From: Octopus sinensis
Lineage: Eukaryota
Assembly: GCF_006345805.1 (NCBI RefSeq)
Contig: NW_021833371.1
Location: 1-29,220 of the forward strand
Reading direction: 5' to 3'
DNA length: 29,220 nucleotides
Made by a program: the position numbers and the translations under genes. This document shows positions 6,775-29,220 of this stretch, piece after piece. The first letter of the stretch is position 1. Each line of letters starts with the position of its first letter. Under the pieces are notes generated by a model. The model ran no database searches. It saw only the letters and a program-made list of their open reading frames with translations, and was not told where the DNA came from.

Positions 6775-6775
<1 letters not shown>

Positions 6776-6834
<59 letters not shown>

Positions 6835-6962: not shown

Positions 6963-7043
6963 TGAGCAATTATGGAATGAATTTTAGGGATTATAAACCT
7001 AATATTTTCCTTTCTGTCCTTAATACCAGTTCCCATATGCTAT

Positions 7044-9670: not shown

Positions 9671-9944
9671 GGTAATTGGATTTTAGTGTGATGCAGGGTT
9701 GGTGTGATGTGCAATATTTTAATGTGTTCTGGTGGTGTTGTGTATAGGTGGTTGCTTGTTTTTATGTGTCAGGTTTTTTTTTTTGTGGTTTTGGCCAACT
9801 TACGTGGAGCCCATTTGAATAGCGTTTGTCTAGCAGATAGATAGATTAATATGAATATATATATATATATATATATGTATAAAGATATATATATATATAT
9901 ATACGTATATACGTGTGTTTGTATGTATATACATATATGTATGT

Positions 9945-10535: not shown

Positions 10536-10668
10536 TACATATATACATATAAAAGACAAAATAAAGTGAAAAACTTCAGAAGACTTGTTTATATGGTTAA
10601 AGAATATATTTAAATCGTCTTGTTTTTAAAAATGCTATAAATTTTTGTGTATAGTAACATTGTTTTTG

Positions 10669-10707
10669 GAGAAATAACCGGTTTCGTATTTGCTTCTCAA
10701 ATTTCTC
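10669..10707 (-). ncRNA. Decayed minimal hammerhead-like motif in a TA-flanked module (about 10545-10900)
   Basis: GAGAAAU-UUGAGAA-GCAAAUAC-GAAA-CCGGUU-AUUUCUC. Stem I is a perfect 7 bp and stem III is ACCGGU, but the core and stem II are degenerate. Confidence 0.45.
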
Positions 10708-11229
10708 GAATTTTTTACCGATACTGTGTCATCTCTTCACTATGATTTGAAGTATGAGAGTTTCAGACAGGGGAAGGTAATCAGGGATTTTTTCGGTATA
10801 AGAGAGATAATTATAAATATTGGGAATGACTAGGTTTTATTAATTTAAAATGATTTGGGTTAGAAAGAATAGAATGTTAGAAGTGGTTAGGTTTTGATTT
10901 ATATATATATATATTTTCCAATGAGGTAAGTTTCCTCATTTAAAAATGCTAGAAAAAGTTAACTTTGGGCTTATATTATAAGTAGGTTTCCTTATTTAAT
11001 CTAACTTGTGTTGGTGTACCAATAGCACATTGATAAAATGGAAAGATTAGAAATTGTGGCAGTAGTTACTTTGCTCATTTCTCAATGTGTTTACTAAAGG
11101 GTATCATTCTGTATGTTGGGAATGCAATCTGCTGTAAATGCAGAGTGCATCTGCATCTGAGTGATAATCCCGTGGACCCTATGTAGTTTTGGTGGCAGCC
11201 CGAGCATCCAGGGGACCTATAATTACAAT

Positions 11230-11600
11230 CCATTATAGCTGAAATTCAGTTCTGGCTGAATCAATATCCAGAAGAAATACCGTAAAGAATCAGCAAAGAA
11301 TTCATAATTGAATCGGTTGAATTCATCCTATGAAACAACCACTTTATGTTTGACAACATGTTTTATCAACAAAAATCCGGGACTGCCATGGGTACTAGGG
11401 CAGTCCCAGTCATTGCGAACCTAACAATGAGCTATCTGGAAATAATAATATACCAGGAATCTTTATCTACATTTGGAAACCCTCTTTCCCAATACATAAA
11501 AGAAAATTGGAAAAGATTTCTAGATGACTGTTTCAACCTCTGGAATGAAAACACAAATTCCTGAAATTCAAAAGACTTGAATATTTTTGTTTAAATTTGT
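11230..11600 (+). mobile_element. PLE reverse transcriptase fragment, second family (mirror 28865-29220, minus)
   Basis: NHFMFDNMFYQQKSGTAMGTR.APVIANLTMSYLE...WKRFLDDCF. Confidence 0.8.
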
Positions 11601-11849
11601 AAAGTATTTCAGAAACTTTGTGATAAGGTTCCTGCCTAGGAACATAGCCATGACATCCCCAAAAATATCAACATCTTTATTTTGGTATTTAGGAAGAAAT
11701 AAGAGGGAAATCATGCCAGGGTCAATACTGCAGTCCTTAACAAAAAAGGTTAAAAGGAACCCTCAAAACCTCAGTCTACCAACCAATAACCTAAGTTACA
11801 GTTGTCCCATTGTGTCAAGGTTACACAAAATATCAGCAAAGGAGTCACA

Positions 11850-12040
11850 TCACCATCATTATCATCATTTAACATCTGTCTCCCATGCTGGCATGGGTTG
11901 GACAGTTTGAGAGGAGCAGGTAAGCCAGTGGACTGTGTCAAGTTTGAGTCTGTTTTGGAATGGTCTCTACATCTGGATGCCCATCCTAATGCCAAACACA
12001 TTACAGGGTGTACTGGATGCTTTTCATGGAGCACCAACAT
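11850..12040 (-). mobile_element. SINE/RTE-type 3' tail (mirror about 28421-28611)
   Basis: Reverse complement has TTGGCATTAGGAAGGGCATCCAG...CCAACCCATGCCAGCATGG..GATGTTAAATGATGAT. Confidence 0.65.
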
Positions 12041-12324
12041 TGGAGACGTCTGTTTTGGCATAGACATGGACAAAAGATGGTGCTACAGGACCAAAGTAGA
12101 TTAAATCATTGTATAAGAAGAAATAAGACGTTTTCAAATATTTTAAATATTTATTTATTTAAAAAAAACAGCCATATATAAGTACATGTTTGGTAAAGTT
12201 TTAGTAATATCAGGATCAGTTTTTGTTAATTACATTATAATTCGGTCTTGTTTCTTGACATTTCATGACCCACTTTTCCTACAAATCTCATCCACTTATA
12301 AAACAGGACCCACACATATGTATA

Positions 12325-12707
12325 CATTCTTTTATTTATTTCAGTCATTTGACTGCGGCCATGCTGGAGCACCACCTTTACTCGAGAAAATCGACCCTAG
12401 GACTTATTCTTTGTAAGCCTAGAACTTATTCTATCGGTCCCTTTTGCCAAACCGCTAAGTTACGGGCATGTGAACATGCCAGCATCGGTTGTCAGGTGAT
12501 GTTAGGGACAAACGCACACACACACACATATATATATATATACGATGGGCTTCTTTTAATTTCTGTCTACTAAATACACTCACAAGGATTTGGGCGGACC
12601 CGAGGCTACAGTAGAAGACAGTTGCCCAAGGTGCCACACAGTGGGACTGAACCCAGAACCATGTAGTTGGTAAGCAAGCTACTTACCACACAGCTACTCC
12701 TGCACCT
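12325..12707 (-). mobile_element. Full-length tRNA/CORE-type SINE
   Basis: Head with A box TAGCTGTGTGG and B box GGTTCAGTCCC, CORE-like GGCACCTTGGGCAA.TGTCTTCTAC, internal (TA)(TG)n, and a 3' body ending ATGACTGAAA.AA.TAAAAGA. Confidence 0.85.
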
Positions 12708-13224
12708 ATATGTACACACACATGTATATATGTACACACACACACTTACATACATATATGTGTGTGTGCAATCATTAATCCAGACACATTTTCTTCTCTC
12801 CGTTTTTTACTTCATTCCTTTCTGTTCCTTGTTTGTTCTTTTCTTGGCTGTCTTTGTTTGTACAATTTTCAACTATACATTTACACACACTAATACTTTT
12901 CCCTCAATGAGATATTCCTCTTAACATGATAAGGCCTTTGTGGACAGTTCTTTTTATCAATGCTTACTGGTTACACTGAGTATTGGTCTACATGTGTACT
13001 TCATATGCATAACATGCTGCATGTATTTATATGTGTTTGTGTGCATGTATATTAGTAAAATTAAAATATTAGTGTATATTAGTAAAATTACAGTACAGTG
13101 AAAAAAAGGTATAGTGAAGCTGCCATGAAGAGTGGAAGATCCAACATTTCAAATAGACTCTTCCAGAGAATAGTTGCCAAGAAAGAAATTAATAAGGGAC
13201 AACAGCTTTACATCCTCTGCCATG

Positions 13225-14630
13225 TCGAGTATGCACACTGACATTACACATCCATCAGAGCATACTGGCTTCATTCCTCGCGAGTTTACGCATGTCCTCA
13301 GCAGTCACAGCCCATGTTTCACTGCCATGTAGCATGGCTGTTCGTACACATGCATCATACAGTCTGACTTTTACTCTGAGCGAGAGGCCTTTAGTCACCA
13401 GCAGAGGTAAGAGCTCTCTAAACTTAGCCCAGGCTATTCTTACTCTAGCAGTTACACTTTCAGTACACCCACCCCCACTACTGACTTGGTAACCTAGATA
13501 ACGGAAGCTATCAACTACTTCTAGTTTTTTCTCCTGGAAAGTGACGGAAGTTGTTTTCTGCAGATTTTCAGTGTTTATTGCTCCTGAGCATCTGCCAAAT
13601 ACAAAAACTATCTTCCCAGTTAGCCTTCCTTTAACATTGCTGCACCTCTTATGTGTCCATAGCTTACACTGGGTACATCTTATAGAGTTTCTACCTACAC
13701 CTTTCCTACAGATCGAGCAGGGCCATCTACTTGAAGGCATTTGTGGTTTATCTACCTTCCTACTTATTAGGACTTTGGTTTTAGCTAGGTTGACTCTAAG
13801 GCCCCTCAATTCTAATCCTTGCTTCCACACCTGAAACTTCTTCTCCAGTTCTGATAGTGACTCAGCAATTAGAGCAAGGTCATCAGCATAGAGGAGCTCC
13901 CAGGGGCATCCTGTCTTGAATTCCTCCGTAATTGCCTGGAGGACTATGATAAATAGGAGGGGGCTGAGGACTGAACCCTGGTGGACCCCAACCTCTACCT
14001 TGAATTCTTCAGTGTACACGTTGCCAACCCTAACCTTACTTACAGCATCCCTGTACATGGCTTGCACAGCTCTCACCAGCCATTCATCTATCCCTAGTTT
14101 CCTCATTGACCACCAGATAAGGGATCGGGGGGACCCTGTCGAAGGCTTTCTCCATGTCAACGAAAGCCAGGTACAGGGGCTTATCTTTGGCTAGGTATTT
14201 CTCCTGCAGAAATATGGCATCAGTGGTTCTTTTCCCTGGCACAAAACCAAACTGCATCTCATCCAAGTTGACTCTCTCCCTAATCAGTTGGGCTATGACC
14301 CTCTCCGTAACCTTCATTACCTGATCCAACAGCTTGATACCTCTGTAACTATTTGTATCTAGGGCGTCACCTTTACCTTTGTAGCAGTTGACTATTATGC
14401 TGCTACACCAGTCATTGGGTATGACTCCTTCGTGTATCACCTGGTTAACTATAAAGGCGACTAGGCTATAGCCGACACTGCCAGATATTTTGAGCATCTC
14501 TGCAGTAATTCCTGATGGGCCTGGGGCTTTCCCTATCTTCATGCTTCTAATTGCCTTAACTACCAAAGAACTGTCAACTCGGATAGCTGGTCCCTCTGTT
14601 GGGTTGACATTCGGCAGGCTCTCTTTATCC
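13225..14630 (-). mobile_element. RTE-clade LINE, 5'- and 3'-truncated, RT with inserted PHD finger
   Basis: ORFs 14084-14749 and 13255-14160: KAPGPSG, YRGIKLL, QFGF, DMEKAFD, GVHQGSVLSP, YADD, FRYLG, LHGSETW. One frameshift and a CGA>TGA stop. Confidence 0.95.
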
Positions 14631-14879
14631 CATATACTTATATATACATATATATATATATATATAATACACACACGATATGCATATATGACTGTGAAAA
14701 ACCATAACCATTTATTAAGAAAATTAGTTATCAATATTTTCACTAACATATTTCCTATAGAATCATGAAACTAATTCCTTCCAAGTGTTTTCCTCAGGAG
14801 AATATTCTTCTATCATAATATTTCTGTTGGAATATTGAAACCTTTACATCACACCTATTTATTAAATCAAAACAAATTT

Positions 14880-14965
14880 TAAATTTAATTTTTAGAAAAA
14901 TTCAATTTTAATTTTTAGAAAAATTCAATTTTAATTTTAGAAAGAATTCAATTTTAAGTTTAGAA
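14880..14965. repeat. 23-bp tandem repeat ATTTTTAGAAAAATTCAATTTTA; the left arm has one more unit than the right (about 26150-26215)
   Basis: Explains the 41117 to 41094 shift in mirror coordinate sums. Confidence 0.85.
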
Positions 14966-15160
14966 AATCTAACACAAGTATAATCAGTCCATGCCATGAC
15001 AGCCGGCTTAATTTTCAAGATGAAATATTAAAAGATCTTTCAACAACTCGTAAGATTGTAGCAATAAACATGACCAAATAATTAAGTTTCCTGTTCTGTC
15101 TTTCCTGTGTATCAAGTAAGTCTTATCTCCAAACAAACAAGTTTTCCATCTGATGTTCTG

Positions 15161-15312
15161 CTAGACGTGTTCCAGTAAACTCAGATAATCTGAAAGGATC
15201 TGTGATTCTTCTATAAGTAAGAAATCAAGGTAATCTTCAGAATCTCTGGGTAGAATTTTCCTGAAATTATCCAACACCTCCTTCTCTTTCATGTCTTGTT
15301 CTTGAGTATTTT
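15161..15312 (-). CDS. Candidate terminal coding exon of an unidentified host gene
   Basis: Acceptor CCTTTCTATTTTGACAG|. Only the phase-1 frame is open: NTQEQDMKEKEVLDNFRKILPRDSEDYLDFLLIEESQILSDYLSLLEHV*. No TE motifs, and AATAAA about 275-300 nt downstream. Confidence 0.5.
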
Positions 15313-15354
15313 CTGTCAAAATAGAAAGGATTATAAATGTAAAATGCCAGTTAT

Positions 15355-15515
15355 CATTTTATCTTTTACTTGTTTCAGTCATTGGATTGCAGCCATGCTG
15401 GAGCACTACCTTGAAGGATTTAATCAAATAAATTAACCCCAGGACATATTTTCTTTTTAATCTGATGCATATTCTATCAGTCGATTTTGGCGAACCATTA
15501 AGGGGATGTAAATAA
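15355..15515 (-). mobile_element. SINE 3' tail fragment (mirror about 25602-25762)
   Basis: TCTTTTACTTGTTTCAGTCATT.GA.TGC.GCCATGCTGGAGCAC. Confidence 0.75.
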
Positions 15516-15593
15516 AACTGGGACAGACCCAAAGGGAGGCCTGAGGGACACATGTCTCCCTCAAGAAAAGAAGTGCGCCCTTTTAAATAATAT

Positions 15594-16922
15594 TATAAGT
15601 CTGTTCACCGAAGTCCCAACTGGTGAAGCACTATCAATGATTCAAGAAAAACTAAGGACAGACATCCATATAAAAGAACGCACTAGTATGCCAATAAGAA
15701 ACCTGATGAAAATGTTGACTTTCTGTGCAGAAACTACCTATAGATAGATATACCTACAGTATAGATAGATATCGACATGAAGAGAGTTTAGCTATGGGTT
15801 CACCATTATCACCAATAATAGCCAATATATACATGGAATACTTTAAGAATTTGGCTTTAGGATCAACACCACTAAAACCAACACTATGGCTGCTATATGT
15901 TGATGACACCTTCATACTCTGGCCCCATCAGGAAGATGTCCAAGTGTTGTTAGATCATGTGAACTCAATAAAGCCATCCATACAGTTCACAATGGAAAAA
16001 GAAAAAGACAATCAGCTAGCATTCCTGGACGTGTTAATAACACACACCAGGTATGGATTCAGCACATCCGTATACTGCAAGCCGACCTTTGCTAGACGAT
16101 CCTTCAACTTCAGCTCCCAACATCCATACAGTGTAAAGAGAGGGATTGCTCAGTGCCTAAAACCTCGAGCAATGAATATAAGTAGCAATCAAGCTCAGTA
16201 ACAATCTATTAAGCAACAACTACCCCAAAATCACTCTCCACTCCAATCATGAAGAAAAGAGAGGATGAAACTGATAAACTAATCACAGTCTGTCTACCCT
16301 ATGTGAAAGGCCTCTCTGAAAAGATACAAAAGATATGCGGCCTATATGACATCAGGGCAGTATTCAAAAGTAACATAACACTTTGCAAATATCTCCTTCA
16401 AGTAAAACCACCAATAGAAGAGAATATGACTAAGAACTGCATGTACTCCATCCCATACAGCTGTGGTAGGTAATACAAAGGCAAGATATGCTGCCACCCC
16501 AAAATAAGGGTAGAAGAACATCGCAAAGTTGTGACATGGGGAGATATTGATTAATCGGGTATAGCTGATCAAGTATGGAAAAATGGAGACCACTTTCCCC
16601 TGTGGGATGAAGTTAAAATAATAGACAGAGAACACCACTGAGAAATACGAAAACTAAAAGAAGCAGCACATATGCTAGGACACAACAACCTCCGAAGCAG
16701 ACTGAGTGCAGTTAGGAACAGCATATGGAAAGTGGTATTAAGGAAGGATAGGAGAATATTAGATTTATAAGCCTTTGGTAATAACAACACCAACATCAAA
16801 AAATACCTTTTCCCAAGACACCTGATGAAGACTGGAGGGCATATCAGCCGAAACATTGTGTTAACAACAAACAAGATGAGGACAAATATCCATCAATTGT
16901 AAATTCCTCATCTCTTAAATAT
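15594..16922 (+). mobile_element. 5'-truncated Penelope-like element: RT, GIY-YIG endonuclease, pLTR with hammerhead
   Basis: SLFTEVP; LAMGSPLSPIIANIYME; WLLYVDDTF; IQFTMEKE..QLAFLDV; NCMYSIPYSCGR*YKG..RVEEH; RKLKEA. Several stops. Confidence 0.92.
16817..16862 (+). ncRNA. Minimal type I hammerhead in PLE pLTR (mirror 24255-24300, minus)
   Basis: GACAC-CUGAUGAA-GACUG(loop)CAGCC-GAAACAUU-GUGUU. Confidence 0.65.
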
Positions 16923-17051
16923 AGAACTGGAATATATATATACATATTGATACAAATGGTAAGACAACAAAAGAAAGAAAGAGACCTCGATATTATGTAA
17001 ATAGAGGAATTTGTCTGTAAATGTAATATGTGACAATTATTCGGTAGCCAT

Positions 17052-17112
17052 GATAAAACTCCAAGTTTCAGATGTCAGACTGGAAATCCACGCCGCCCTC
17101 TCTTCAGTTATC
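17052..17112 (-). ncRNA. Type I hammerhead-like motif in an approximately 200-bp TA-flanked module (16925-17132); mirror 24005-24065, plus
   Basis: GAUAA-CUGAAGA-[stem II with UGG/CCA hairpin]-GAA-ACU(UGG)AGU-U-UUAUC. Stem I is 5 bp, stem III is 3 bp, and the triplet is GUU. Confidence 0.6.
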
Positions 17113-17150
17113 CAGCCATCGGAAAAAATGCTATATATATATATATATAT

Positions 17151-18780
17151 ATTTATCATAGTCCTCCAGGCAATAACGGAGGAATTCAAGACAGGATGCC
17201 CTTGGGAGCTCCTCTATGCTGATGACCTTGCTCTAATTGCTGAGTCGCTATCAGAACTGGAGGAGAAGTTTCAGGTGTGGAAACAAGGATTAGAATCGAA
17301 GGGCCTCAGAGTCAATCTAGCTAAAACCAAAGTCGTAATCAGTAGGAAGGTAGACAAATCACAAACACCTTCAGGTAGATGGCCCTGCTCGATCTGTAGA
17401 AAAGGTGTAGGTAGAAACTCTATAAGATGCACCAAGTGTAAGCTATGGACACATAAGAGATGCAGCAATGTCAAAGGAAGGCTAACTAGGAAGATGGTTT
17501 TTGTATGTGGCAGATGCTCAGGAACAATAAACACTGAAAATGCTCTGAGACCAACTTCCGTCACTTTCCAGGGAGAAAAACTAGAAATAGTTGATAGTTT
17601 CCGTTACCTAGGTGACCAAGTCAGCAGCGGGGGCGGGTGTGCTGAAAGTGTAACTGCTAGAGTAAGAATAGCTTGGGCAAAGTTCAGAGAGCTCTTACCG
17701 CTGCTGGTGACAAAAGGCCTCTCGCACAGAGTGAAAGGCAGACTGTATGATGCGTGTGTACGAACAGCCATGCTACATGGCAGTGAAACATGGGCCGTGA
17801 CTGCTGAGGATATGCGTAAGCTCGCTAGAAATGAAGCCAGTATGCTCCGATGGATGTGTAATGCCGGTACTCACACTCGGCAGAGTGTAAGTACCTTGAG
17901 AGAAAAGCTGGACCTAAGAAGCATCAGTTGTGGTGTGCAAGAGAGACGTTTGCGCTGGTATGGTCATGTGGCGAGAATGGATGAAGATAGTTGTGTGAAA
18001 AAGTGCCACACCCTAGCGGTTGAGGGAACCTGTGGAAGAGGCAGACCCAGGAAAACCTGGGACGAGGTGGTGAAGCACGACCTTCAAACTTTAGGTCTCA
18101 CTGAGGAAATGACTAGAGACCGAGACCTCTGGAAGTGTGCTGTGCGCGAGAAGACCCGGCAGGACAAGTGAGTCCATAACCCGTGGCCTTCTACATGGGA
18201 TGGAGCCAGCCTACGTATGCATACCTTCCCTTCTTGGGACACAAAACTCTACTTGTGAAGACGTGATGAGGCAAGTGAGGATCAGAATCGAAATCGATCA
18301 ATGGAAATTGCGGATGTGCTACCAGTGCCGGTGGCATGTCAAAACTCTGCTTGTGAAGACCCGTTGAGGCAAGTGACGATCAGAATCGAAATCGATCAAT
18401 GGAAATCGATCAATGGAAATTGCAGATGTGTTACCAGTGCCGGTGGCATGTAAGAGAACTTTCCGTTTCGCGACCGTTGCCAGCACCGCCCCGTTTCGTG
18501 TCCGTTGCCAGCCTCGCCTGGCCCTCGTGCCGGTGGCACATAAAAAGCACCATCCGTTCGTGGCCGTTTGCCAGCTCTGTCTGGCACCAGTGCGGGTGGC
18601 ACGTAAAAAGCACCCACTACACTCACGGAGTGGTTGGCGTTAGGAAGGGCATCCAGCCGTAGAAACACTGCCAGATTTGACTGGGCCTGATGAAGCCTTC
18701 TGGCTTCACAGACCCCAGTAGAACCGTCCAACCCATGCTAGCATGGAAAACGGACGCTAAACGATGATGATGATGATGAT
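17151..18780 (+). mobile_element. 5'-truncated RTE LINE with intact 3' end, PHD finger in RT, (GAT)n tail
   Basis: Open from IIVLQA through YADD, PHD, FRYLG, LHGSETW, RRLRWYGHV, GRGRPRKTW to the stop at 18171. The 3' UTR has a 98-bp tandem duplication and ends GACGCTAAACGATGATGAT. Confidence 0.96.
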
Positions 18781-18788
18781 ATATATAC

Positions 18789-19117
18789 GGCTTTGTAAGT
18801 TACTGAGAAAAAGCTACTATGGAAGGCTTATAGTATAATAACTGTATAACATATAATAATATTTTATTCCTGGTTTGAAGCAACAATTTATAAATACAAA
18901 CAAATAACTTAAAAATGTTGAGCTAACCCCACACAGAATCAAACCCACAAATCAACACTAACATCCAATTGGCCAAATGCTCATTCATCAATTTCAGCCA
19001 AATTTAGTTAATATATACTTAAAGAGAGAATAAAATATTGCTACGGTATGTTATTATACGGTTACCGGTATACTATGAACCTTCCATTGTAGCTTTCTCT
19101 CCATAACTTACAAAGCC
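18789..19117. mobile_element. MITE-like element with about 85-bp imperfect TIRs (mirror 21997-22325); a diverged inverted interior copy lies at about 19329-19517
   Basis: GGCTTTGTAAGTTA..GAGA.AAAGCTAC.ATGGAAGG at both ends; no clear TSD. Confidence 0.7.
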
Positions 19118-19134
19118 TTCTGCGTTGCTTTACA

Positions 19135-19305
19135 AATATTATATGTAGTATGTCTTTCCATTCTGACTTCAAATTCCATCGAGGTCGACTTTATCTTCCA
19201 TCCTTTTGGAGTTGATAAATTAAATACCTGTTGCGTATTGGGTTGATCTAATTGACTGCCCCCACCAAAAAACAATTTCAGGCCTTGTGCTTAGCATAGA
19301 AAAGG
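19135..19305 (+). mobile_element. Decayed SINE body (mirror about 21809-21979)
   Basis: TTCAAATTCC..CGAGGTCGACTTT..CTTCCATCCTTT.GG.GT.GATAAAT motif; family not assigned. Confidence 0.5.
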
Positions 19306-19552
19306 TTATATATAGTACATGTTAGACGGTATATATTAACTAAATTTGGCTGAAATTGATAGGTGAGTGTTTGGCTAATCAGATACACAAGAATCCGTAT
19401 TGTCGTCAATTTGTAGGTTCGTTTCTAGCTGGGGTTAATTCATTATTATCCAGTCATTTGTTGGTATTTATAAATTGTCACTTCAAAACAGAGAATAAAA
19501 TGTTATTATACAGTTGTATATATATATATATATATATATATATGAAGATATA

Positions 19553-19874
19553 TACTCTTTTACTTGTTTCAGTCCTTTGACTGCGGCCATGCTGAAACAC
19601 CGTCTTTAGTCAAGCAAATCGACCCCGGGACTTATCTATCGGTCTCTTTGCCGAACCACTAAGTGACGTAAACACACCAGCATCAGTTGTCAAGCAATGC
19701 TAAAGGGACAAACATAGACACACAAACATGCACTCACATATATATATGCATATATACGACAGGCTTCTTTCAGTTTCTGTCTACCAAATCCACTCACAAG
19801 GCTTTGGTCGGCCCGAGGCTATAGTAGAAGACACTTGCCCAAGATGCCACGCAGTGGGACTGAACCCGGAACCA
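19553..19874 (-). mobile_element. tRNA/CORE-type SINE truncated in the head by (TA)n (mirror 21240-21561)
   Basis: Same body as 12325-12660. Confidence 0.85.
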
Positions 19875-19947
19875 GATATATATATATACATATATATATA
19901 CATACATACATATATATAAATAATTTATATCTATATATATATATATG

Positions 19948-19998
<51 letters not shown>

Positions 19999-20005
19999 TA
20001 TATAT

Positions 20006-20472
20006 AAAAATAATTAAATAGTGTTCAGTCCAGATTCTCTCACTCTGCAAAAGTTTCTAGTTCGAATCACACGTGTCTCGAGATGTGCCGAAGATTTTCT
20101 ATTTTGGATATATTTGGGGTACTTAGGTCTGCTCTGGACTTAGTGCTTGCTTTTTCCATGGGTATGAGTAAGTATTTCATTTATATCTCACGTATTTATC
20201 GCTGAAGAGAGGAAAATTCTTATGAATTAACCCCGAAATTGGGACCAATACGGTAATAACGGATTTTTTAGAAATTTCTATCTGTTTGTTTCGAGATGCA
20301 CAAATTATAATGGTTATTGACAATTTTGTCTTTTTTTCGGCATATTTGGCATTAGAATTTTTCTTTTGCCCTTATTTTGTAAATTATTTATAAATTTAAC
20401 CTTTAGAGGTATTTTTTGATATGCTGGCCATTGATAAAATTTTTTTCGAGAAAAAAATTTTATCTTCATTAG

Positions 20473-20473
<1 letters not shown>
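20006..20473 (+). mobile_element. Non-coding, (TA)n-flanked hammerhead module (retrozyme- or pLTR-like); mirror about 20647-21115
   Basis: About 470 bp of complex sequence between two long (TA)n tracts, with a central hammerhead and a 14-bp terminal hairpin. Confidence 0.55.
20191..20261 (+). ncRNA. Type I hammerhead ribozyme with intact catalytic core
   Basis: Stem I UUAUCG/CGGUAA plus 2x2 loop plus CGU/ACG; CUGAAGA; stem II GAGG..AAUUC(UUAU)GAAUU..CCCC; GAA; stem III AUUG(GGAC)CAAU; triplet AUA, with cleavage predicted after 20250. Confidence 0.78.
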
Positions 20474-20510
<37 letters not shown>

Positions 20511-20616
20511 ATATATATATACATATATATATACATACATACATATACATATATATATATATATATATACATATATATGTATATGTATGTATGTATATAT
20601 ATATGTATATATATAT

Positions 20617-20646
<30 letters not shown>
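20474..20646. repeat. Compound (TA)n/(TACA)n microsatellite forming the palindrome axis
   Basis: C20548 pairs with G20579 (axis about 20563.5). The 30 nt between them are pure alternating AT except a single C at 20570. Confidence 0.95.
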
Positions 20647-20647
<1 letters not shown>

Positions 20648-20859
20648 ACTAATGAAGATAAAATTTTTTTCTCGAAAAAAATTTTATCAATGGCCAGCAT
20701 ATCAAAAAATACCTCTAAAGGTTAAATTTATAAATAATTTACAAAATAAGGGCAAAAGAAAAATTCTAATGCCAAATATGCCGAAAAAAAGACAAAATTG
20801 TCAATAACCATTATAATTTGTGCATCTCGAAACAAACAGATAGAAATTTCTAAAAAATC

Positions 20860-20930
20860 CGTTATTACCGTATTGGTCCCAATTTCGGGGTTAATTCATA
20901 AGAATTTTCCTCTCTTCAGCGATAAATACG
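20860..20930 (-). ncRNA. Mirror copy of the type I hammerhead
   Basis: Reverse complement of 20191-20261 (coordinate sum 41121). Confidence 0.78.
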
Positions 20931-21106
20931 TGAGATATAAATGAAATACTTACTCATACCCATGGAAAAAGCAAGCACTAAGTCCAGAGCAGACCTAAGT
21001 ACCCCAAATATATCCAAAATAGAAAATCTTCGGCACATCTCGAGACACGTGTGATTCGAACTAGAAACTTTTGCAGAGTGAGAGAATCTGGACTGAACAC
21101 TATTTA

Positions 21107-21168
<62 letters not shown>

Positions 21169-22333
21169 CATATATATATATAGATATAAATTATTTATAT
21201 ATATGTATGTATGTATATATATATGTATATATATATATCTGGTTCCGGGTTCAGTCCCACTGCGTGGCATCTTGGGCAAGTGTCTTCTACTATAGCCTCG
21301 GGCCGACCAAAGCCTTGTGAGTGGATTTGGTAGACAGAAACTGAAAGAAGCCTGTCGTATATATGCATATATATATGTGAGTGCATGTTTGTGTGTCTAT
21401 GTTTGTCCCTTTAGCATTGCTTGACAACTGATGCTGGTGTGTTTACGTCACTTAGTGGTTCGGCAAAGAGACCGATAGATAAGTCCCGGGGTCGATTTGC
21501 TTGACTAAAGACGGTGTTTCAGCATGGCCGCAGTCAAAGGACTGAAACAAGTAAAAGAGTATATATCTTCATATATATATATATATATATATATATACAA
21601 CTGTATAATAACATTTTATTCTCTGTTTTGAAGTGACAATTTATAAATACCAACAAATGACTGGATAATAATGAATTAACCCCAGCTAGAAACGAACCTA
21701 CAAATTGACGACAATACGGATTCTTGTGTATCTGATTAGCCAAACACTCACCTATCAATTTCAGCCAAATTTAGTTAATATATACCGTCTAACATGTACT
21801 ATATATAACCTTTTCTATGCTAAGCACAAGGCCTGAAATTGTTTTTTGGTGGGGGCAGTCAATTAGATCAACCCAATACGCAACAGGTATTTAATTTATC
21901 AACTCCAAAAGGATGGAAGATAAAGTCGACCTCGATGGAATTTGAAGTCAGAATGGAAAGACATACTACATATAATATTTGTAAAGCAACGCAGAAGGCT
22001 TTGTAAGTTATGGAGAGAAAGCTACAATGGAAGGTTCATAGTATACCGGTAACCGTATAATAACATACCGTAGCAATATTTTATTCTCTCTTTAAGTATA
22101 TATTAACTAAATTTGGCTGAAATTGATGAATGAGCATTTGGCCAATTGGATGTTAGTGTTGATTTGTGGGTTTGATTCTGTGTGGGGTTAGCTCAACATT
22201 TTTAAGTTATTTGTTTGTATTTATAAATTGTTGCTTCAAACCAGGAATAAAATATTATTATATGTTATACAGTTATTATACTATAAGCCTTCCATAGTAG
22301 CTTTTTCTCAGTAACTTACAAAGCCGTATATAT

Positions 22334-23966
22334 ATCATCATCATCATCATCATCGTTTAGCGTCCGTTTTCCATGCTAGCATGGGTTGGACGGTTCTACT
22401 GGGGTCTGTGAAGCCAGAAGGCTTCATCAGGCCCAGTCAAATCTGGCAGTGTTTCTACGGCTGGATGCCCTTCCTAACGCCAACCACTCCGTGAGTGTAG
22501 TGGGTGCTTTTTACGTGCCACCCGCACTGGTGCCAGACAGAGCTGGCAAACGGCCACGAACGGATGGTGCTTTTTATGTGCCACCGGCACGAGGGCCAGG
22601 CGAGGCTGGCAACGGACACGAAACGGGGCGGTGCTGGCAACGGTCGCGAAACGGAAAGTTCTCTTACATGCCACCGGCACTGGTAACACATCTGCAATTT
22701 CCATTGATCGATTTCCATTGATCGATTTCGATTCTGATCGTCACTTGCCTCAACGGGTCTTCACAAGCAGAGTTTTGACATGCCACCGGCACTGGTAGCA
22801 CATCCGCAATTTCCATTGATCGATTTCGATTCTGATCCTCACTTGCCTCATCACGTCTTCACAAGTAGAGTTTTGTGTCCCAAGAAGGGAAGGTATGCAT
22901 ACGTAGGCTGGCTCCATCCCATGTAGAAGGCCACGGGTTATGGACTCACTTGTCCTGCCGGGTCTTCTCGCGCACAGCACACTTCCAGAGGTCTCGGTCT
23001 CTAGTCATTTCCTCAGTGAGACCTAAAGTTTGAAGGTCGTGCTTCACCACCTCGTCCCAGGTTTTCCTGGGTCTGCCTCTTCCACAGGTTCCCTCAACCG
23101 CTAGGGTGTGGCACTTTTTCACACAACTATCTTCATCCATTCTCGCCACATGACCATACCAGCGCAAACGTCTCTCTTGCACACCACAACTGATGCTTCT
23201 TAGGTCCAGCTTTTCTCTCAAGGTACTTACACTCTGCCGAGTGTGAGTACCGGCATTACACATCCATCGGAGCATACTGGCTTCATTTCTAGCGAGCTTA
23301 CGCATATCCTCAGCAGTCACGGCCCATGTTTCACTGCCATGTAGCATGGCTGTTCGTACACACGCATCATACAGTCTGCCTTTCACTCTGTGCGAGAGGC
23401 CTTTTGTCACCAGCAGCGGTAAGAGCTCTCTGAACTTTGCCCAAGCTATTCTTACTCTAGCAGTTACACTTTCAGCACACCCGCCCCCGCTGCTGACTTG
23501 GTCACCTAGGTAACGGAAACTATCAACTATTTCTAGTTTTTCTCCCTGGAAAGTGACGGAAGTTGGTCTCAGAGCATTTTCAGTGTTTATTGTTCCTGAG
23601 CATCTGCCACATACAAAAACCATCTTCCTAGTTAGCCTTCCTTTGACATTGCTGCATCTCTTATGTGTCCATAGCTTACACTTGGTGCATCTTATAGAGT
23701 TTCTACCTACACCTTTTCTACAGATCGAGCAGGGCCATCTACCTGAAGGTGTTTGTGATTTGTCTACCTTCCTACTGATTACGACTTTGGTTTTAGCTAG
23801 ATTGACTCTGAGGCCCTTCGATTCTAATCCTTGTTTCCACACCTGAAACTTCTCCTCCAGTTCTGATAGCGACTCAGCAATTAGAGCAAGGTCATCAGCA
23901 TAGAGGAGCTCCCAAGGGCATCCTGTCTTGAATTCCTCCGTTATTGCCTGGAGGACTATGATAAAT
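22334..23966 (-). mobile_element. Mirror copy of the RTE
   Basis: ORF 22946-24106 has a translation identical to ORF 17011-18171. Confidence 0.96.
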
Positions 23967-24194
23967 ATATATATATATATATATAGCATTTTTTCCGATG
24001 GCTGGATAACTGAAGAGAGGGCGGCGTGGATTTCCAGTCTGACATCTGAAACTTGGAGTTTTATCATGGCTACCGAATAATTGTCACATATTACATTTAC
24101 AGACAAATTCCTCTATTTACATAATATCGAGGTCTCTTTCTTTCTTTTGTTGTCTTACCATTTGTATCAATATGTATATATATATTCCAGTTCT

Positions 24195-25523
24195 ATATTT
24201 AAGAGATGAGGAATTTACAATTGATGGATATTTGTCCTCATCTTGTTTGTTGTTAACACAATGTTTCGGCTGATATGCCCTCCAGTCTTCATCAGGTGTC
24301 TTGGGAAAAGGTATTTTTTGATGTTGGTGTTGTTATTACCAAAGGCTTATAAATCTAATATTCTCCTATCCTTCCTTAATACCACTTTCCATATGCTGTT
24401 CCTAACTGCACTCAGTCTGCTTCGGAGGTTGTTGTGTCCTAGCATATGTGCTGCTTCTTTTAGTTTTCGTATTTCTCAGTGGTGTTCTCTGTCTATTATT
24501 TTAACTTCATCCCACAGGGGAAAGTGGTCTCCATTTTTCCATACTTGATCAGCTATACCCGATTAATCAATATCTCCCCATGTCACAACTTTGCGATGTT
24601 CTTCTACCCTTATTTTGGGGTGGCAGCATATCTTGCCTTTGTATTACCTACCACAGCTGTATGGGATGGAGTACATGCAGTTCTTAGTCATATTCTCTTC
24701 TATTGGTGGTTTTACTTGAAGGAGATATTTGCAAAGTGTTATGTTACTTTTGAATACTGCCCTGATGTCATATAGGCCGCATATCTTTTGTATCTTTTCA
24801 GAGAGGCCTTTCACATAGGGTAGACAGACTGTGATTAGTTTATCAGTTTCATCCTCTCTTTTCTTCATGATTGGAGTGGAGAGTGATTTTGGGGTAGTTG
24901 TTGCTTAATAGATTGTTACTGAGCTTGATTGCTACTTATATTCATTGCTCGAGGTTTTAGGCACTGAGCAATCCCTCTCTTTACACTGTATGGATGTTGG
25001 GAGCTGAAGTTGAAGGATCGTCTAGCAAAGGTCGGCTTGCAGTATACGGATGTGCTGAATCCATACCTGGTGTGTGTTATTAACACGTCCAGGAATGCTA
25101 GCTGATTGTCTTTTTCTTTTTCCATTGTGAACTGTATGGATGGCTTTATTGAGTTCACATGATCTAACAACACTTGGACATCTTCCTGATGGGGCCAGAG
25201 TATGAAGGTGTCATCAACATATAGCAGCCATAGTGTTGGTTTTAGTGGTGTTGATCCTAAAGCCAAATTCTTAAAGTATTCCATGTATATATTGGCTATT
25301 ATTGGTGATAATGGTGAACCCATAGCTAAACTCTCTTCATGTCGATATCTATCTATACTGTAGGTATATCTATCTATAGGTAGTTTCTGCACAGAAAGTC
25401 AACATTTTCATCAGGTTTCTTATTGGCATACTAGTGCGTTCTTTTATATGGATGTCTGTCCTTAGTTTTTCTTGAATCATTGATAGTGCTTCACCAGTTG
25501 GGACTTCGGTGAACAGACTTATA
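24195..25523 (-). mobile_element. Mirror copy of the PLE
   Basis: Identical translations for ORFs 24644-24868 and 24916-25392. Confidence 0.92.
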
Positions 25524-25804
25524 ATATTATTTAAAAGGGCGCACTTCTTTTCTTGAGGGAGACATGTGTCCCTCAGGCCTCCCTTTGGGTCTGTCCCAGT
25601 TTTATTTACATCCCCTTAATGGTTCGCCAAAATCGACTGATAGAATATGCATCAGATTAAAAAGAAAATATGTCCTGGGGTTAATTTATTTGATTAAATC
25701 CTTCAAGGTAGTGCTCCAGCATGGCTGCAATCCAATGACTGAAACAAGTAAAAGATAAAATGATAACTGGCATTTTACATTTATAATCCTTTCTATTTTG
25801 ACAG

Positions 25805-25956
25805 AAAATACTCAAGAACAAGACATGAAAGAGAAGGAGGTGTTGGATAATTTCAGGAAAATTCTACCCAGAGATTCTGAAGATTACCTTGATTTCTTAC
25901 TTATAGAAGAATCACAGATCCTTTCAGATTATCTGAGTTTACTGGAACACGTCTAG
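25805..25956 (+). CDS. Mirror copy of the candidate terminal exon
   Basis: Reverse complement of 15161-15312; AG at 25803-25804, TAG at 25954-25956. Confidence 0.5.
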
Positions 25957-26230
25957 CAGAACATCAGATGGAAAACTTGTTTGTTTGGAGATAAGACTTA
26001 CTTGATACACAGGAAAGACAGAACAGGAAACTTAATTATTTGGTCATGTTTATTGCTACCATCTTACGAGTTGTTGAAAGATCTTTTAATATTTCATCTT
26101 GAAAATTAAGCCGGCTGTCATGGCATGGACTGATTATACTTGTGTTAGATTTTCTAAACTTAAAATTGAATTCTTTCTAAAATTAAAATTGAATTTTTCT
26201 AAAAATTAAATTTAAAATTTGTTTTGATTT

Positions 26231-26236
26231 AATAAA
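26231..26236 (+). promoter_or_regulatory. Candidate polyadenylation signal AATAAA for the terminal exon (mirror 14858-14863)
   Basis: Canonical hexamer followed by GTGTGATGT. Weak evidence in AT-rich DNA. Confidence 0.3.
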
Positions 26237-26262
26237 TAGGTGTGATGTAAAGGTTTCAATAT

Positions 26263-26562
26263 TCCCAGGGGCATCCTGTCTTGAATTCCTCCGTAATTGC
26301 CTGGAGGACTATGATAAATAGGAGGGGGCTGAGGACTGAACCCTGGTGGACCCCAACCTCTACCTTGAATTCTTCAGTGTACATGTTGCCAACCCTAACC
26401 TTACTTACAGCATGCTGTAAGTAAGGTTAGGGTTGGCAACGTGTACACTGAAGAATTCAAGGTAGAGGTTGGGGTCCACCAGGGTTCAGTCCTCAGCCCC
26501 CTCCTATTTATCATAGTCCTCCAGGCAATTACGGAGGAATTCAAGACAGGATGCCCCTGGGA
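26263..26562. repeat. Nested spacer-less 150+150 bp hairpin (inverted duplication of RTE RT sequence) in the right arm
   Basis: 26263-26412 is a same-strand copy of 13898-14047 and folds at CAGCA|TGCTG (26412/26413). One mismatch (T26384 vs G26441). Confidence 0.95.
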
Positions 26563-27236
26563 GCTCCTCTATGCTGATGACCTTGCTCTAATTGCTGAGT
26601 CACTATCAGAACTGGAGAAGAAGTTTCAGGTGTGGAAGCAAGGATTAGAATTGAGGGGCCTTAGAGTCAACCTAGCTAAAACCAAAGTCCTAATAAGTAG
26701 GAAGGTAGATAAACCACAAATGCCTTCAAGTAGATGGCCCTGCTCGATCTGTAGGAAAGGTGTAGGTAGAAACTCTATAAGATGTACCCAGTGTAAGCTA
26801 TGGACACATAAGAGGTGCAGCAATGTTAAAGGAAGGCTAACTGGGAAGATAGTTTTTGTATTTGGCAGATGCTCAGGAGCAATAAACACTGAAAATCTGC
26901 AGAAAACAACTTCCGTCACTTTCCAGGAGAAAAAACTAGAAGTAGTTGATAGCTTCCGTTATCTAGGTTACCAAGTCAGTAGTGGGGGTGGGTGTACTGA
27001 AAGTGTAACTGCTAGAGTAAGAATAGCCTGGGCTAAGTTTAGAGAGCTCTTACCTCTGCTGGTGACTAAAGGCCTCTCGCTCAGAGTAAAAGTCAGACTG
27101 TATGATGCATGTGTACGAACAGCCATGCTACATGGCAGTGAAACATGGGCTGTGACTGCTGAGGACATGCGTAAACTCGCGAGGAATGAAGCCAGTATGC
27201 TCTGATGGATGTGTAATGTCAGTGTGCATACTCGAC
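26413..27236 (+). mobile_element. Mirror of the 3' part of the RTE at 13225-14047
   Basis: ORF 26441-27205 has a translation identical to the corresponding part of ORF 13255-14160. Confidence 0.95.
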
Positions 27237-27753
27237 ATGGCAGAGGATGTAAAGCTGTTGTCCCTTATTAATTTCTTTCTTGGCAACTATTCTCTGGAAG
27301 AGTCTATTTGAAATGTTGGATCTTCCACTCTTCATGGCAGCTTCACTATACCTTTTTTTCACTGTACTGTAATTTTACTAATATACACTAATATTTTAAT
27401 TTTACTAATATACATGCACACAAACACATATAAATACATGCAGCATGTTATGCATATGAGGTACACATGTAGACCAATACTCAGTGTAACCAGTAAGCAT
27501 TGATAAAAAAAAACTGTCCACAAAGGCCTTATCATGTTAAGAGGAATATCTCATTGAGGGAAAAGTATTAGTGTGTGTAAATGTATAGTTGAAAATTGTA
27601 CAAACAAAGACAGCCAAGAAAAGAACAAACAAGGAACAGAAAGGAATGAAGTAAAAAATGGAGAGAAGAAAATGTGTCTGGATTAATGATTGCACACACA
27701 CATATATGTATGTAAGTGTGTGTGTGTACATATATACATGTGTGTGTACATAT

Positions 27754-28136
27754 AGGTGCAGGAGTAGCTGTGTGGTAAGTAGCTTGCTTACCAACTACAT
27801 GGTTCTGGGTTCAGTCCCACTGTGTGGCACCTTGGGCAACTGTCTTCTACTGTAGCCTCGGGTCCGCCCAAATCCTTGTGAGTGTATTTAGTAGACAGAA
27901 ATTAAAAGAAGCCCATCGTATATATATATATATGTGTGTGTGTGTGCGTTTGTCTCTAACATCACCTGACAACCGATGCTGGCATGTTCACATGCCCGTA
28001 ACTTAGCGGTTTGGCAAAAGGGACCGATAGAATAAGTTCTAGGCTTACAAAGAATAAGTCCTAGGGTCGATTTTCTCGAGTAAAGGTGGTGCTCCAGCAT
28101 GGCCGCAGTCAAATGACTGAAATAAATAAAAGAATG
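27754..28136 (+). mobile_element. Mirror copy of the full-length SINE
   Basis: Reverse complement of 12325-12707 (coordinate sum 40461). Confidence 0.85.
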
Positions 28137-29220
28137 TATACATATGTGTGGGTCCTGTTTTATAAGTGGATGAGATTTGTAGGAAAAGTGGGTCATGAAA
28201 TGTCAAGAAACAAGACCGAATTATAATGTAATTAACAAAGACTGATCCTGATATTACTAAAACTTTACCAAACATGTACTTATATATGGCTGTTTTTTTT
28301 AAATAAATAAATATTTAAAATATTTGAAAACATCTTATTTCTTCTTATACAATGATTTAATCTACTTTGATCCTGTAGCACCACCTTTTGTCCATGTCTA
28401 TGCCAAAACAGACCTCTCCAATGTTGGTGCTCCATGAAAAGCATCCAGTACACCCTGTAAAGTGTTTGGCATTAGGAAGGGCATCCAGATGTAGAAACCA
28501 TTCCAAAACAGACTCAAACTTGACACAGTCCACTGGCTTAACTGCTCCTCTCAAACTGTCCAACCCATGCCAGCATGGGAGACAGATGTTAAATGATGAT
28601 AATGATGGTGATGTGACTCCTTTGCTGATATTTTGTGTAACCTTGACACAATGGGACAACTGTAACTTAGGTTATTGGTTGGTAGACTGAGGTTTTGAGG
28701 GTTCCTTTTAACCTTTTTTGTTAAGGACTGCAGTATTGACCCCTGGCATGATTTCCCTCTTATTTCTTCCTAAATACCATAATAAAGATGTTGATATTTT
28801 TTGGGATGCCATGGCTATGTTTCTAAGCAGGAACTTTATCTCAAAGTTCCTGAAATACTTTACAAATTTAAACAAAAATATTCAATAGTCTTTTGAATCT
28901 CAGGAAATTGTGTTTTCATTCCAGAGGTTGAAACAATCATCTAGAAATCTTTTCCAATTTTCTTTTATGTATTGGGAAAGAGGGTTTCCAAATGTAGATA
29001 AAGATTCTTGGTATATTATTATTTCCAGATAGCTCATTGTTAGGTTCGCAATGACCGGGGCTACCCTAGTACCCATGGCAGTCCCGGATTTTTGTTGATA
29101 AAACATCTTGTCAAACAGAAAGTGGTTGTTTCATGGGATGAATTCAACGGATTCAATTATGAATTCTTTGCTGATTCTTTCCGGTATATCTTCTGGATAT
29201 TGGTTCAGCCAGAACTGAAT

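What the first reader, a model, noticed from the sequence alone, without database searches (positions are those of the whole stretch)
11244..29220. Spacer-less palindrome of at least 18 kb with its axis inside a (TA)n microsatellite
Seen: everything from 11244 onward is mirrored about 20563.5 with no unique spacer; the axis is pure (TA)n with one C. Established: (TA)n is its own reverse complement, extrudes cruciforms, and can prime fold-back synthesis at a break, the classic route to giant palindromes. Perfect multi-kb palindromes are normally unstable. Established caveat: the same self-complementarity makes assemblers strand-flip at (TA)n. Inference: this is either a rare stable animal palindrome or a fold-back joining two haplotypes.
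Basis: partly seen in the sequence, partly recalled or inferred. Interest (0 to 1): 0.85.

Follow-up and report, generated by a model that had tools for sequence, protein, structure and literature searches.

The report
Spacer-less 18-kb palindrome, probably fold-back artefact
The last 18 kb of this octopus-like, transposon-rich window really is a giant inverted repeat hinged in a (TA)n microsatellite, but the sequence alone cannot show it exists in the animal, and it most likely comes from a fold-back DNA molecule or read that put one locus into the assembly twice.

Summary
Window 11244-29220 is an inverted repeat with no unique spacer. Its axis lies in a TA-rich compound microsatellite (20474-20647, core (TA)10 plus one C). 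It is not a perfect mirror:
- Within 7.5 kb of the axis the arms differ by one SNP, four microsatellite lengths and one 23-bp VNTR unit.
- The right arm lacks 780 bp of a LINE that the left arm has (14049-14828). It carries a 150-bp inverted duplication instead, which forms a second spacer-less palindrome (26263-26562).
- 31 of 39 SNPs sit in the outermost 1 kb (3-4% divergence).

So the arms are two different versions of one sequence, not the two strands of one molecule. They also did not diverge uniformly after a duplication. Two readings survive:
- A false inverted duplication, about 0.65. A hairpin-capped or fold-back read at (TA)n joins two alleles, and the right arm ends at the window end.
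- A genuine palindrome, about 0.2, homogenised by arm-to-arm gene conversion and eroding at its outer edge.

No independent copy of the locus could be found, so read mapping is decisive. The host DNA is octopod intergenic sequence made of degraded retrotransposons. Interest is low to moderate.

The parts
11244..20560 (.). Left arm of the inverted repeat (9.3 kb). It continues leftwards into sequence (1-11243) whose partner would lie beyond the window end.
20561..29220 (.). Right arm (8.66 kb), cut off by the end of the window.
   Evidence: Position 29220 pairs with 11244.
20474..20647 (.). TA-rich compound microsatellite that holds the axis: (TA)n AAAGA (TA)5 CA (TA)5 CATACATACATATACA (TA)10 followed by its mirror. 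The core is 20549-20582, with a single asymmetry (C at 20571, or equivalently a TATATG indel). The left copy has three extra TA units at 20474-20479.
   Evidence: Sequence; TRF (I3); hairpin fold.
14049..14828 (-). Left-arm-only 780 bp. It comprises the 5' part of a 5'-truncated LINE reverse-transcriptase gene (RT ORFs 13255-14160 and 14084-14749 on the minus strand) plus about 200 bp of flank. The left arm is the intact, ancestral state.
   Evidence: (RVT_1 profile positions 5-83 and 93-204 are continuous across 14049).
26263..26562 (.). Right-arm-only second spacer-less palindrome. 26263-26413 is a forward copy of left-arm 13898-14048 with one CpG C>T change (26384). 26412-26562 is the exact reverse complement of 13898-14048. 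The axis is AGCA|TGCT with a 2-nt AT overlap. The other junction, at 26262/26263, has TCC microhomology. This element replaces the 780 bp missing from this arm.
   Evidence: I12; I2.
11244..12250 (.). SNP-dense outer zone of the left arm: 31 substitutions and 2 small indels against its partner, about 3.1% (4.4% in the first 500 bp). It is derived from a degraded reverse-transcriptase fragment (ORF 11346-11564).
28211..29220 (.). Partner of the SNP-dense outer zone, at the very end of the window.
14884..14967 (.). 23-bp tandem repeat, 3.7 copies here and 2.7 copies in the partner at 26150-26210. This difference explains the three apparent SNPs at 14900-14906.
17011..18171 (+). LINE ORF (RT C-terminal part plus PHD finger) inside the left arm. 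It is mirrored identically at 22946-24106 (-). It is 92% identical to the other copy at 13242-13955 and its mirror. This is ordinary octopod transposon content, not part of any mechanism.
15725..16201 (+). RT fragment of a second retroelement family in the left arm, mirrored at 24916-25392 (-).

Best explanation
This is a false inverted duplication: one genomic locus (flank, arm, (TA)n, then unknown distal sequence) is represented twice, head to head.

The most likely route, which I infer and have not shown, runs as follows. A DNA fragment ended inside the (TA)n array. Its self-complementary single-stranded tail snapped back and was sealed or extended during library preparation, or the end was already hairpin-capped. 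The sequencer then read down one strand, round the (TA)n turn, and back up the other strand. No adapter and no spacer would be left at the junction. The assembler joined this fold-back read to ordinary reads of the same locus.

On this view the left arm and flank (1-20560) come from one allele or from the consensus. The right arm (20561-29220) is the other strand of a molecule from the other allele, and it stops where that molecule stopped, at the window end. The arm differences would then be allelic: microsatellite and VNTR lengths, one 780-bp deletion with an inverted duplication, and a dense SNP patch in a transposon fragment.

Shown: the structure and the nature of the differences. Inferred: the molecule-level origin, the allelic status of the arms, and that 29220 is a contig end.
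For: (a) The junction has no spacer and lies exactly in a self-complementary (TA)n run. TA-rich arrays make up only a few per cent of the window, so the axis position depends on a hairpin-forming sequence.

(b) The right arm runs to the last base of a window of unrounded length (29,220). The mirrored span (17,977 bp; arms 8.7-9.3 kb) is the size of one long read.

(c) Ko et al. [quoted passage not shown]

(d) Inverted-repeat or fold-back chimeric reads are common. They make up 0.55-0.6% of ONT gDNA reads (PMC12870357) and 0.18-7.33% in ONT ligation libraries (PMC13141652). Fold-back inversions are also the main filtered artefact class in PacBio libraries (bioRxiv 10.64898/2026.06.24.734375).

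(e) The arms are different versions of one sequence, and the variation looks biological: 23 transitions to 16 transversions, microsatellite and VNTR length changes, and a microhomology-mediated SV carrying a CpG>TpG change. This is what two alleles look like.

(f) The symmetry is intact right up to the axis, including the mirrored interruptions of a hypermutable microsatellite. That implies a very young junction, yet the outer arms differ by 3-4%. A young junction between already diverged copies fits an artefactual joining of alleles.

(g) From established knowledge, with review PMC7999016 and the abstract of PMC8053094: long spacer-less palindromes are breakage-prone, and fold-back priming in vivo yields hairpin-capped ends and palindromic chromosomes rather than a quiet interstitial 9-kb duplication.
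Against: No reads, depth, contig coordinates or second assembly could be examined, so the key predictions are untested.

The SNP pattern is awkward for two random alleles. There is one SNP in 7.5 kb next to 3-4% in 1 kb, and the divergence decays monotonically towards the axis (22, 9, 1, 3, 0... per 500 bp). A real palindrome with gene conversion predicts the dense patch at the outer end. The allele model places it there only by chance (roughly 0.2, my estimate).

HiFi data show almost no fold-back reads in the one HiFi gDNA dataset tested.

There is no adapter remnant at the axis (sequence). ONT follow-on fold-backs usually carry about 35 bp of adapter, so that particular sub-mechanism is disfavoured.

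The second, non-TA fold-back junction in the right arm must be taken as a genuine allelic SV or as a second artefact in the same molecule. Either way it is a coincidence.
Confidence: 0.65

Rival explanations
1. This is a genuine germline palindrome: an old inverted duplication of at least 9 kb of transposon-rich intergenic DNA. Arm-to-arm gene conversion keeps the arms near-identical, as in primate sex-chromosome palindromes. The outer edge escapes conversion and erodes, and the centre of symmetry lies in a (TA)n array.
For: The divergence profile is what this model predicts. Divergence is about 0.013% over the inner 7.5 kb (1 SNP) and rises stepwise to 0.3%, 1.8% and 4.4% towards the outer end. 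In human Y palindrome P6, 16 of 29 arm differences lie within 20 kb of the outer boundary (arms of about 110 kb, from my own knowledge), with multi-kb conversion tracts (PMC3723533). Fast-mutating microsatellites and an SV that conversion cannot cross are the only inner differences. The substitutions have a biological spectrum. The CpG>TpG change inside the small inverted duplication suggests that this SV has existed in vivo for some time.
Against: 3-4% outer divergence implies great age, yet there is no spacer at all, and the hypermutable central microsatellite is still mirror-symmetric apart from one base and three TA units. Known long-lived palindromes have spacers in the kilobase range, whereas spacer-less ones are breakage hotspots (established knowledge; PMC7999016, abstract of PMC8053094). 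The arms hold only degraded retrotransposon fragments and no genes. The outer boundary would have to lie just beyond the window end by coincidence. The prior for a true spacer-less palindrome of 18 kb or more in an animal is very low compared with the frequency of assembly fold-backs.
Confidence: 0.2
2. This was a real molecule but is not a heritable structure. An in-vivo hairpin-capped break or a somatic fold-back inverted duplication formed at the (TA)n array, through cruciform cleavage or fold-back priming. It was present in a fraction of the sequenced tissue and was captured by the assembler.
For: The axis lies in a cruciform-prone (TA)n array and there is no spacer. The mechanism is described in review PMC7999016. 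The second fold-back junction, with 2-3 nt of microhomology, is the kind of product that replication template switching gives.
Against: This origin predicts arms copied from one chromatid, hence identical. The outer 3-4% divergence and the SV then still require the left arm to come from the other allele. With the data in hand it cannot be told apart from the library artefact. Assemblers rarely keep low-fraction somatic structures.
Confidence: 0.08
3. This is pure single-molecule snap-back: both arms are the two strands of one duplex, and all arm differences are consensus errors.
For: The inner 5.6 kb differ only at microsatellites, a typical long-read error site. All homopolymers of 7 or more are equal.
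Against: A 780-bp deletion with a 150-bp inverted duplication cannot be a consensus error. Nor can 31 substitutions with Ts:Tv of about 1.4 and only 2 indels in 1 kb.
Confidence: 0.03
4. These are the long terminal inverted repeats of a giant fold-back-type transposon or another long-TIR element.
For: The repeat is inverted and has no spacer.
Against: The arms are a mosaic of unrelated, degraded retroelement fragments in both orientations plus SINE-like repeats and microsatellites. They are not subrepeat arrays or the body of one element. No transposase was found. The outer ends and any target-site duplication lie outside the window.
Confidence: 0.02

Closest known systems
False palindromic (inverted) duplications in long-read assemblies, caused by chimeric fold-back reads (Ko et al. 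2022, PMC9516828; fold-back read artefacts in PMC12870357, PMC13141652 and bioRxiv 10.64898/2026.06.24.734375; WGA palindromes in Pacasus, bioRxiv 10.1101/173872)
   Same: Head-to-head duplicate of one locus. The arm length (8.7-9.3 kb) falls in the reported 7-17 kb range and about equals half a read. There is no spacer. One arm ends at the sequence end.
   Different: Depth, linked-read or spanning-read evidence, which defines the class, is not available here. The arms are not identical (SV plus SNP gradient), so a second allele must be invoked. The axis is in (TA)n, not at an adapter.
Primate sex-chromosome palindromes (for example human Y P6) maintained by arm-to-arm gene conversion (PMC3723533, PMC8600007)
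   Same: Arms longer than 8 kb with more than 99.9% identity over most of their length. The differences are concentrated towards the outer boundary.
   Different: Those palindromes have unique spacers in the kilobase range, arms of 9 kb to 1.45 Mb that often carry testis genes, and conservation across species. Here the spacer is 0 bp, the content is only dead transposons, and conservation is untestable.
De novo palindromes from fold-back priming or hairpin-capped breaks, and breakage-fusion-bridge cycles (review PMC7999016)
   Same: Spacer-less inverted duplication hinged on a short self-complementary sequence.
   Different: That route gives initially identical arms and a palindromic, often dicentric, chromosome. 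Here the outer arms differ by 3-4%, and nothing can be said about chromosome-scale structure.
Palindromic AT-rich repeats (PATRR11, 17 and 22; PMC1851657)
   Same: An AT-rich, nearly perfect, spacer-less palindromic centre of about 170 bp that is predicted to extrude a hairpin or cruciform.
   Different: PATRRs are a few hundred bp in total and AT-rich throughout. Here the symmetry continues for 9 kb through ordinary 36-48% GC sequence.

Membership tests
Assembly fold-back / false inverted duplication | Two inverted copies of one locus abut without unique sequence between them | tested here: met
   arms meet inside (TA)n, spacer 0 bp.
Assembly fold-back / false inverted duplication | Half-normal or very low read depth on the duplicated arms, and no independent non-symmetric reads across the junction | not testable with these tools
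   No reads are available. No second copy of the locus was found.
Assembly fold-back / false inverted duplication | One arm truncated at a contig end, with arm length about half a read | tested here: inconclusive
   The right arm ends at the last base of the window, and the mirrored span is 17,977 bp. Whether 29220 is a contig end is unknown.
Assembly fold-back / false inverted duplication (heterotype) | Differences between the copies look like allelic variants (haplotype-specific k-mers) | tested here: inconclusive
   Ts:Tv 23:16, microsatellite and VNTR length changes, and one SV are compatible with alleles. Old paralogous arms would look the same.
Gene-conversion-maintained large palindromes (sex-chromosome type) | Arms of many kb with at least 99.9% identity | tested here: met
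   One SNP in about 7.5 kb nearest the axis. The outer 1 kb falls to about 96-97%.
Gene-conversion-maintained large palindromes (sex-chromosome type) | Unique non-duplicated spacer between the arms | tested here: not met
   Spacer 0 bp, with one asymmetric base in the centre.
Gene-conversion-maintained large palindromes (sex-chromosome type) | Structure conserved between individuals or species, with arm differences being fixed paralogous variants | not testable with these tools
   No orthologous sequence is accessible.
De novo fold-back-priming / BFB palindrome | Arms copied from one template, hence identical apart from new mutations spread evenly | tested here: not met
   31 of 39 SNPs lie in 12% of the aligned length (p = 5e-22), and there is an arm-specific SV.
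PATRR | AT-rich palindrome of a few hundred bp in total | tested here: not met
   Only the central 174 bp are AT-rich. The symmetry extends 9 kb through 33-48% GC sequence.
Fold-back / long-TIR transposon | Arms built of the element's own subrepeats or TIR, with target-site duplication at the outer ends and multiple copies | tested here: not met
   The arms are a mosaic of unrelated degraded retroelements. The outer ends are not in the window, so the TSD is not testable.
PacBio missed-adapter read | SMRTbell adapter sequence at the axis | tested here: not met
   No match with up to 3 mismatches anywhere in the window. The axis is pure TA.

The most novel reading that the evidence does not exclude
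This is a genuine, heritable, spacer-less palindrome of at least 18 kb in an octopod genome, hinged in a (TA)n microsatellite. Arm-to-arm gene conversion keeps it near-perfect while its outer edge erodes (4.4% falling to 0% divergence over 2 kb). That would make it a long-lived perfect palindrome in ordinary autosomal-type intergenic DNA, which current views of palindrome instability say should not persist.
Probability: 0.2. Interest if true: 0.7.

Novelty: not a real feature. Interest (0 to 1): 0.3.

Why it matters
If it is an artefact, it matters only as quality control. The contig should be trimmed at the (TA)n array, and the right arm should be treated as a haplotig. Such fold-backs inflate repeat and duplication counts in cephalopod assemblies. 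It would also be a clean example of a fold-back read hinged on a natural (TA)n hairpin rather than on an adapter.

If it is real, it would be a rare natural test case. It would show how an animal genome tolerates a spacer-less multi-kb palindrome. The visible conversion gradient would also allow tract length and edge erosion to be measured directly.

Tried and rejected
(1) Independent copies of the locus: none found.
- An exact 28-mer next to the axis was scanned against JGI metagenome contigs and gave 0 hits.
- Exact-product look-ups of seven window ORFs, including the ORF that reads through the axis, found nothing on record.
- A protein search with the 386-aa LINE ORF gave no hit of 90% or more. 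The best named hits were Octopus bimaculoides at 84% and O. vulgaris at 73%. The source genome is therefore not in the protein collection, and the species could only be narrowed to an octopod.

(2) Structured RNAs and tRNAs: none.

(3) SMRTbell adapter at the axis: none.

(4) Uniform divergence after duplication: rejected.

(5) Both arms as strands of one molecule: rejected for the outer 3.7 kb.

(6) Twin priming as the origin of the right-arm inverted duplication: rejected. Both arms share the same element, the same 3' part and the same upstream flank. The inverted piece duplicates the adjacent 150 bp instead of upstream element sequence.

(7) A purely graph-level strand flip: judged unlikely, because the pure (TA) run is only 20 nt.

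(8) Pfam scans of ORFs in the SNP-dense zone and in the GC-rich block 18137-18731 found nothing. The RT nature of 11346-11564 rests only on a BLASTP match to the RVT_1-bearing ORF at 15725-16201 (E = 2e-8).


Full report
**Observation**

The window (29,220 bp, no N) was compared with its own reverse complement. Two collinear inverted blocks appear:
- 14897-20560 against 20561-26220, 99.63% identity;
- 11244-14055 against 26406-29220, 98.54% identity.

Position 11244 pairs with 29220, the last base of the window. The outer limit of the repeat is therefore imposed by the window and not by the biology.

The arms meet inside a TA-rich compound microsatellite (20474-20647). The long-range register is 20558.5-20560.5 because the (TA) counts differ between the arms. 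The central 280 nt fold as one DNA hairpin (-121 kcal/mol, z = -34.5 against shuffles).

**How the arms differ**

A base-by-base alignment shows three kinds of difference.

1. Within about 7.5 kb of the axis there is a single true SNP (T at 15057 vs G at 26060).
   - The other differences here are length changes in four of seven microsatellites, one unit of a 23-bp tandem repeat, and (TA)3 / TATATG in the axis array.
   - All homopolymers of 7 or more are equal.
2. The right arm lacks left-arm 14049-14828 (780 bp).
   - In its place, 26263-26413 is a forward copy of left-arm 13898-14048.
   - That copy abuts its own reverse complement (26412-26562). This makes a second spacer-less palindrome of 300 bp with axis AGCA|TGCT.
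   - The junctions show 2 nt (AT) and 3 nt (TCC) of microhomology.
   - The extra copy carries one CpG>TpG change (26384).
   - The missing 780 bp are the 5' part of a LINE reverse-transcriptase gene that is continuous in the left arm (Pfam RVT_1 positions 5-83 and 93-204 across the breakpoint). The left arm is therefore ancestral and the right arm derived.
3. Of 39 substitutions (23 transitions, 16 transversions), 31 lie in 11244-12250.
   - Counts per 500 bp from the outer end are 22, 9, 1, 3, then zeros.
   - The exception is four in the 14744-15243 bin: the 15057 SNP and three false calls caused by the VNTR.
   - Concentration of 31 of 39 in 1,007 of 8,469 aligned bp has a binomial p of 5e-22.

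**Context**

The DNA is octopod. A 386-aa LINE ORF (RT plus PHD finger) has its best named relatives in Octopus bimaculoides (84%) and O. vulgaris (73%). Nothing in the protein collection reaches 90%.

The whole window is transposon-rich intergenic sequence:
- LINE RT fragments in both orientations;
- a second RT family (15725-16201);
- a degraded RT piece in the SNP-dense zone (11346-11564; BLASTP E = 2e-8 against the former);
- SINE-like repeats, a 19-bp satellite and many TA-rich microsatellites.

There are no Rfam families and no tRNAs. The arms are thus ordinary genomic mosaic and not a single element with long terminal repeats.

**What the differences exclude**

- Pure single-molecule snap-back, with both arms being the two strands of one duplex, cannot produce a 780-bp rearrangement. 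It also cannot produce 31 substitutions with a biological spectrum and almost no indels. It is excluded for the outer 3.7 kb.
- A young fold-back duplication that then diverged evenly is excluded by the gradient.
- A missed PacBio adapter is excluded.
- An ONT 'follow-on' read normally leaves about 35 bp of adapter at the junction. None is present here.
- A purely graph-level strand flip is unlikely (my inference). The self-complementary run is only (TA)10, far below long-read overlap lengths. At least one sequenced molecule must therefore have contained the fold-back.
- The axis falls in a (TA)n array although such arrays occupy only a few per cent of the sequence. This points to a hairpin-dependent event, either in vitro or in vivo.

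**The two surviving models**

*Model A, artefact (about 0.65).* The proposed route is as follows.
- A fragment ended in (TA)n and became hairpin-capped. The tail snapped back and was ligated or extended during end repair, or the end was an in-vivo hairpin.
- It was read as strand, turn, then complementary strand.
- The assembler merged this fold-back read with normal reads.

The left arm then reflects one allele or the consensus. The right arm reflects the allele of the fold-back molecule and stops where that molecule stopped. This model explains:
- the absent spacer;
- the perfect symmetry up to the axis in a hypermutable array, which implies a young junction, alongside 3-4% outer divergence, which implies copies that had already diverged;
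- the read-sized span of 17,977 bp;
- the arm ending at the window end.

This error class is documented. False chimeric palindromic sequence of 7-17 kb persisted in curated VGP assemblies (PMC9516828). Fold-back or inverted chimeric reads make up 0.2-7% of ONT reads and are a main artefact class in PacBio libraries.

*Model B, real palindrome with arm-to-arm gene conversion (about 0.2).* The profile has near-zero inner divergence, faster-mutating microsatellites and one conversion-resistant SV as the only inner differences, and stepwise erosion towards the outer edge. That is what such a palindrome should look like. Human Y palindrome P6 has 16 of its 29 single-nucleotide arm differences within 20 kb of the outer boundary (PMC3723533). 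Model A puts the SNP cluster at the outer end only by chance.

Several points count against Model B:
- An age sufficient for 3-4% divergence is hard to reconcile with a zero-length spacer and a still-symmetric (TA)n centre.
- Spacer-less palindromes are breakage hotspots, and long-lived natural palindromes have kilobase-range spacers (established knowledge; review PMC7999016; abstract of PMC8053094).
- In-vivo fold-back priming leads to hairpin-capped ends and palindromic chromosomes, not to a quiet interstitial duplication.
- The arms carry no genes.

**Unexplained under both models**

A second, non-TA fold-back junction lies within the same 29 kb, in one arm only. Its CpG>TpG change hints that it is a genuine variant that existed in vivo. 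That supports the view that the right arm is a real, distinct allele or paralogue and not noise. It does not discriminate between A and B.

**Comparison with known classes**

The structure works like a heterotype false duplication created by a palindromic read. It resembles sex-chromosome palindromes in arm identity and edge divergence, but it fails their spacer criterion. It resembles PATRRs only in its central 170 bp. It fails the identical-arms expectation of de novo fold-back palindromes. Membership in the artefact class cannot be proven here, because the defining evidence (depth and spanning reads) is outside the tools. All attempts to find an independent copy of the locus failed.

**Verdict**

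It is most likely not a feature of the animal's genome. Interest is 0.3. The novel reading, a stable spacer-less palindrome with a visible conversion gradient, keeps a probability of about 0.2 and would deserve about 0.7 if confirmed. Read mapping and k-mer depth would settle the question quickly.

Noticed in passing
window 26263-26562: A second spacer-less palindrome (2 x 150 bp, axis AGCA|TGCT, not in a microsatellite) is present only in the right arm. It is coupled to a 780-bp deletion of LINE sequence. The junction microhomologies are AT and TCC, and the duplicated copy carries one CpG>TpG change. This is either a fold-back-type allelic structural variant or a second artefact.
   Followed up: yes
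window 7044-8277 vs 15764-16921: 7044-7649 is inverted (82%) and 7677-8277 is direct (90%) relative to a continuous RT-bearing element in the left arm. The two pieces overlap by about 30 bp at the junction. This is the geometry expected of a 5'-inverted, twin-priming-type retroelement insertion.
   Followed up: partly
window 4821-5391: A 19-bp satellite (TAAATAGCACCCCTACACT), about 30 copies, 78% matches.
   Followed up: no
window 3579-3802, 12328-12661, 19530-19874 (and mirrors): A SINE-like repeat of about 200-350 bp (80-84% between copies). Each copy lies next to a TA- or CA-rich microsatellite. Such arrays (1663-1769, 9855-9948, 19876-20006) are about as long as half of the axis array.
   Followed up: no
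window 18137-18731 (mirror 22386-22980): A GC-rich (about 48%) block with 63-bp and 14-bp tandem units and overlapping ORFs on both strands. There is no Pfam hit and its nature is unknown.
   Followed up: partly
window 6775-6887: A (CAT)26 run followed by (ATT)12. It creates spurious poly-Ser / poly-Asp ORFs on the two strands.
   Followed up: no
window 11244-12250: Arm-to-arm divergence decays monotonically from the outer end towards the axis: 4.4%, 1.8%, about 0.3%, then about 0. The zone overlaps a degraded reverse-transcriptase fragment (11346-11564).
   Followed up: yes
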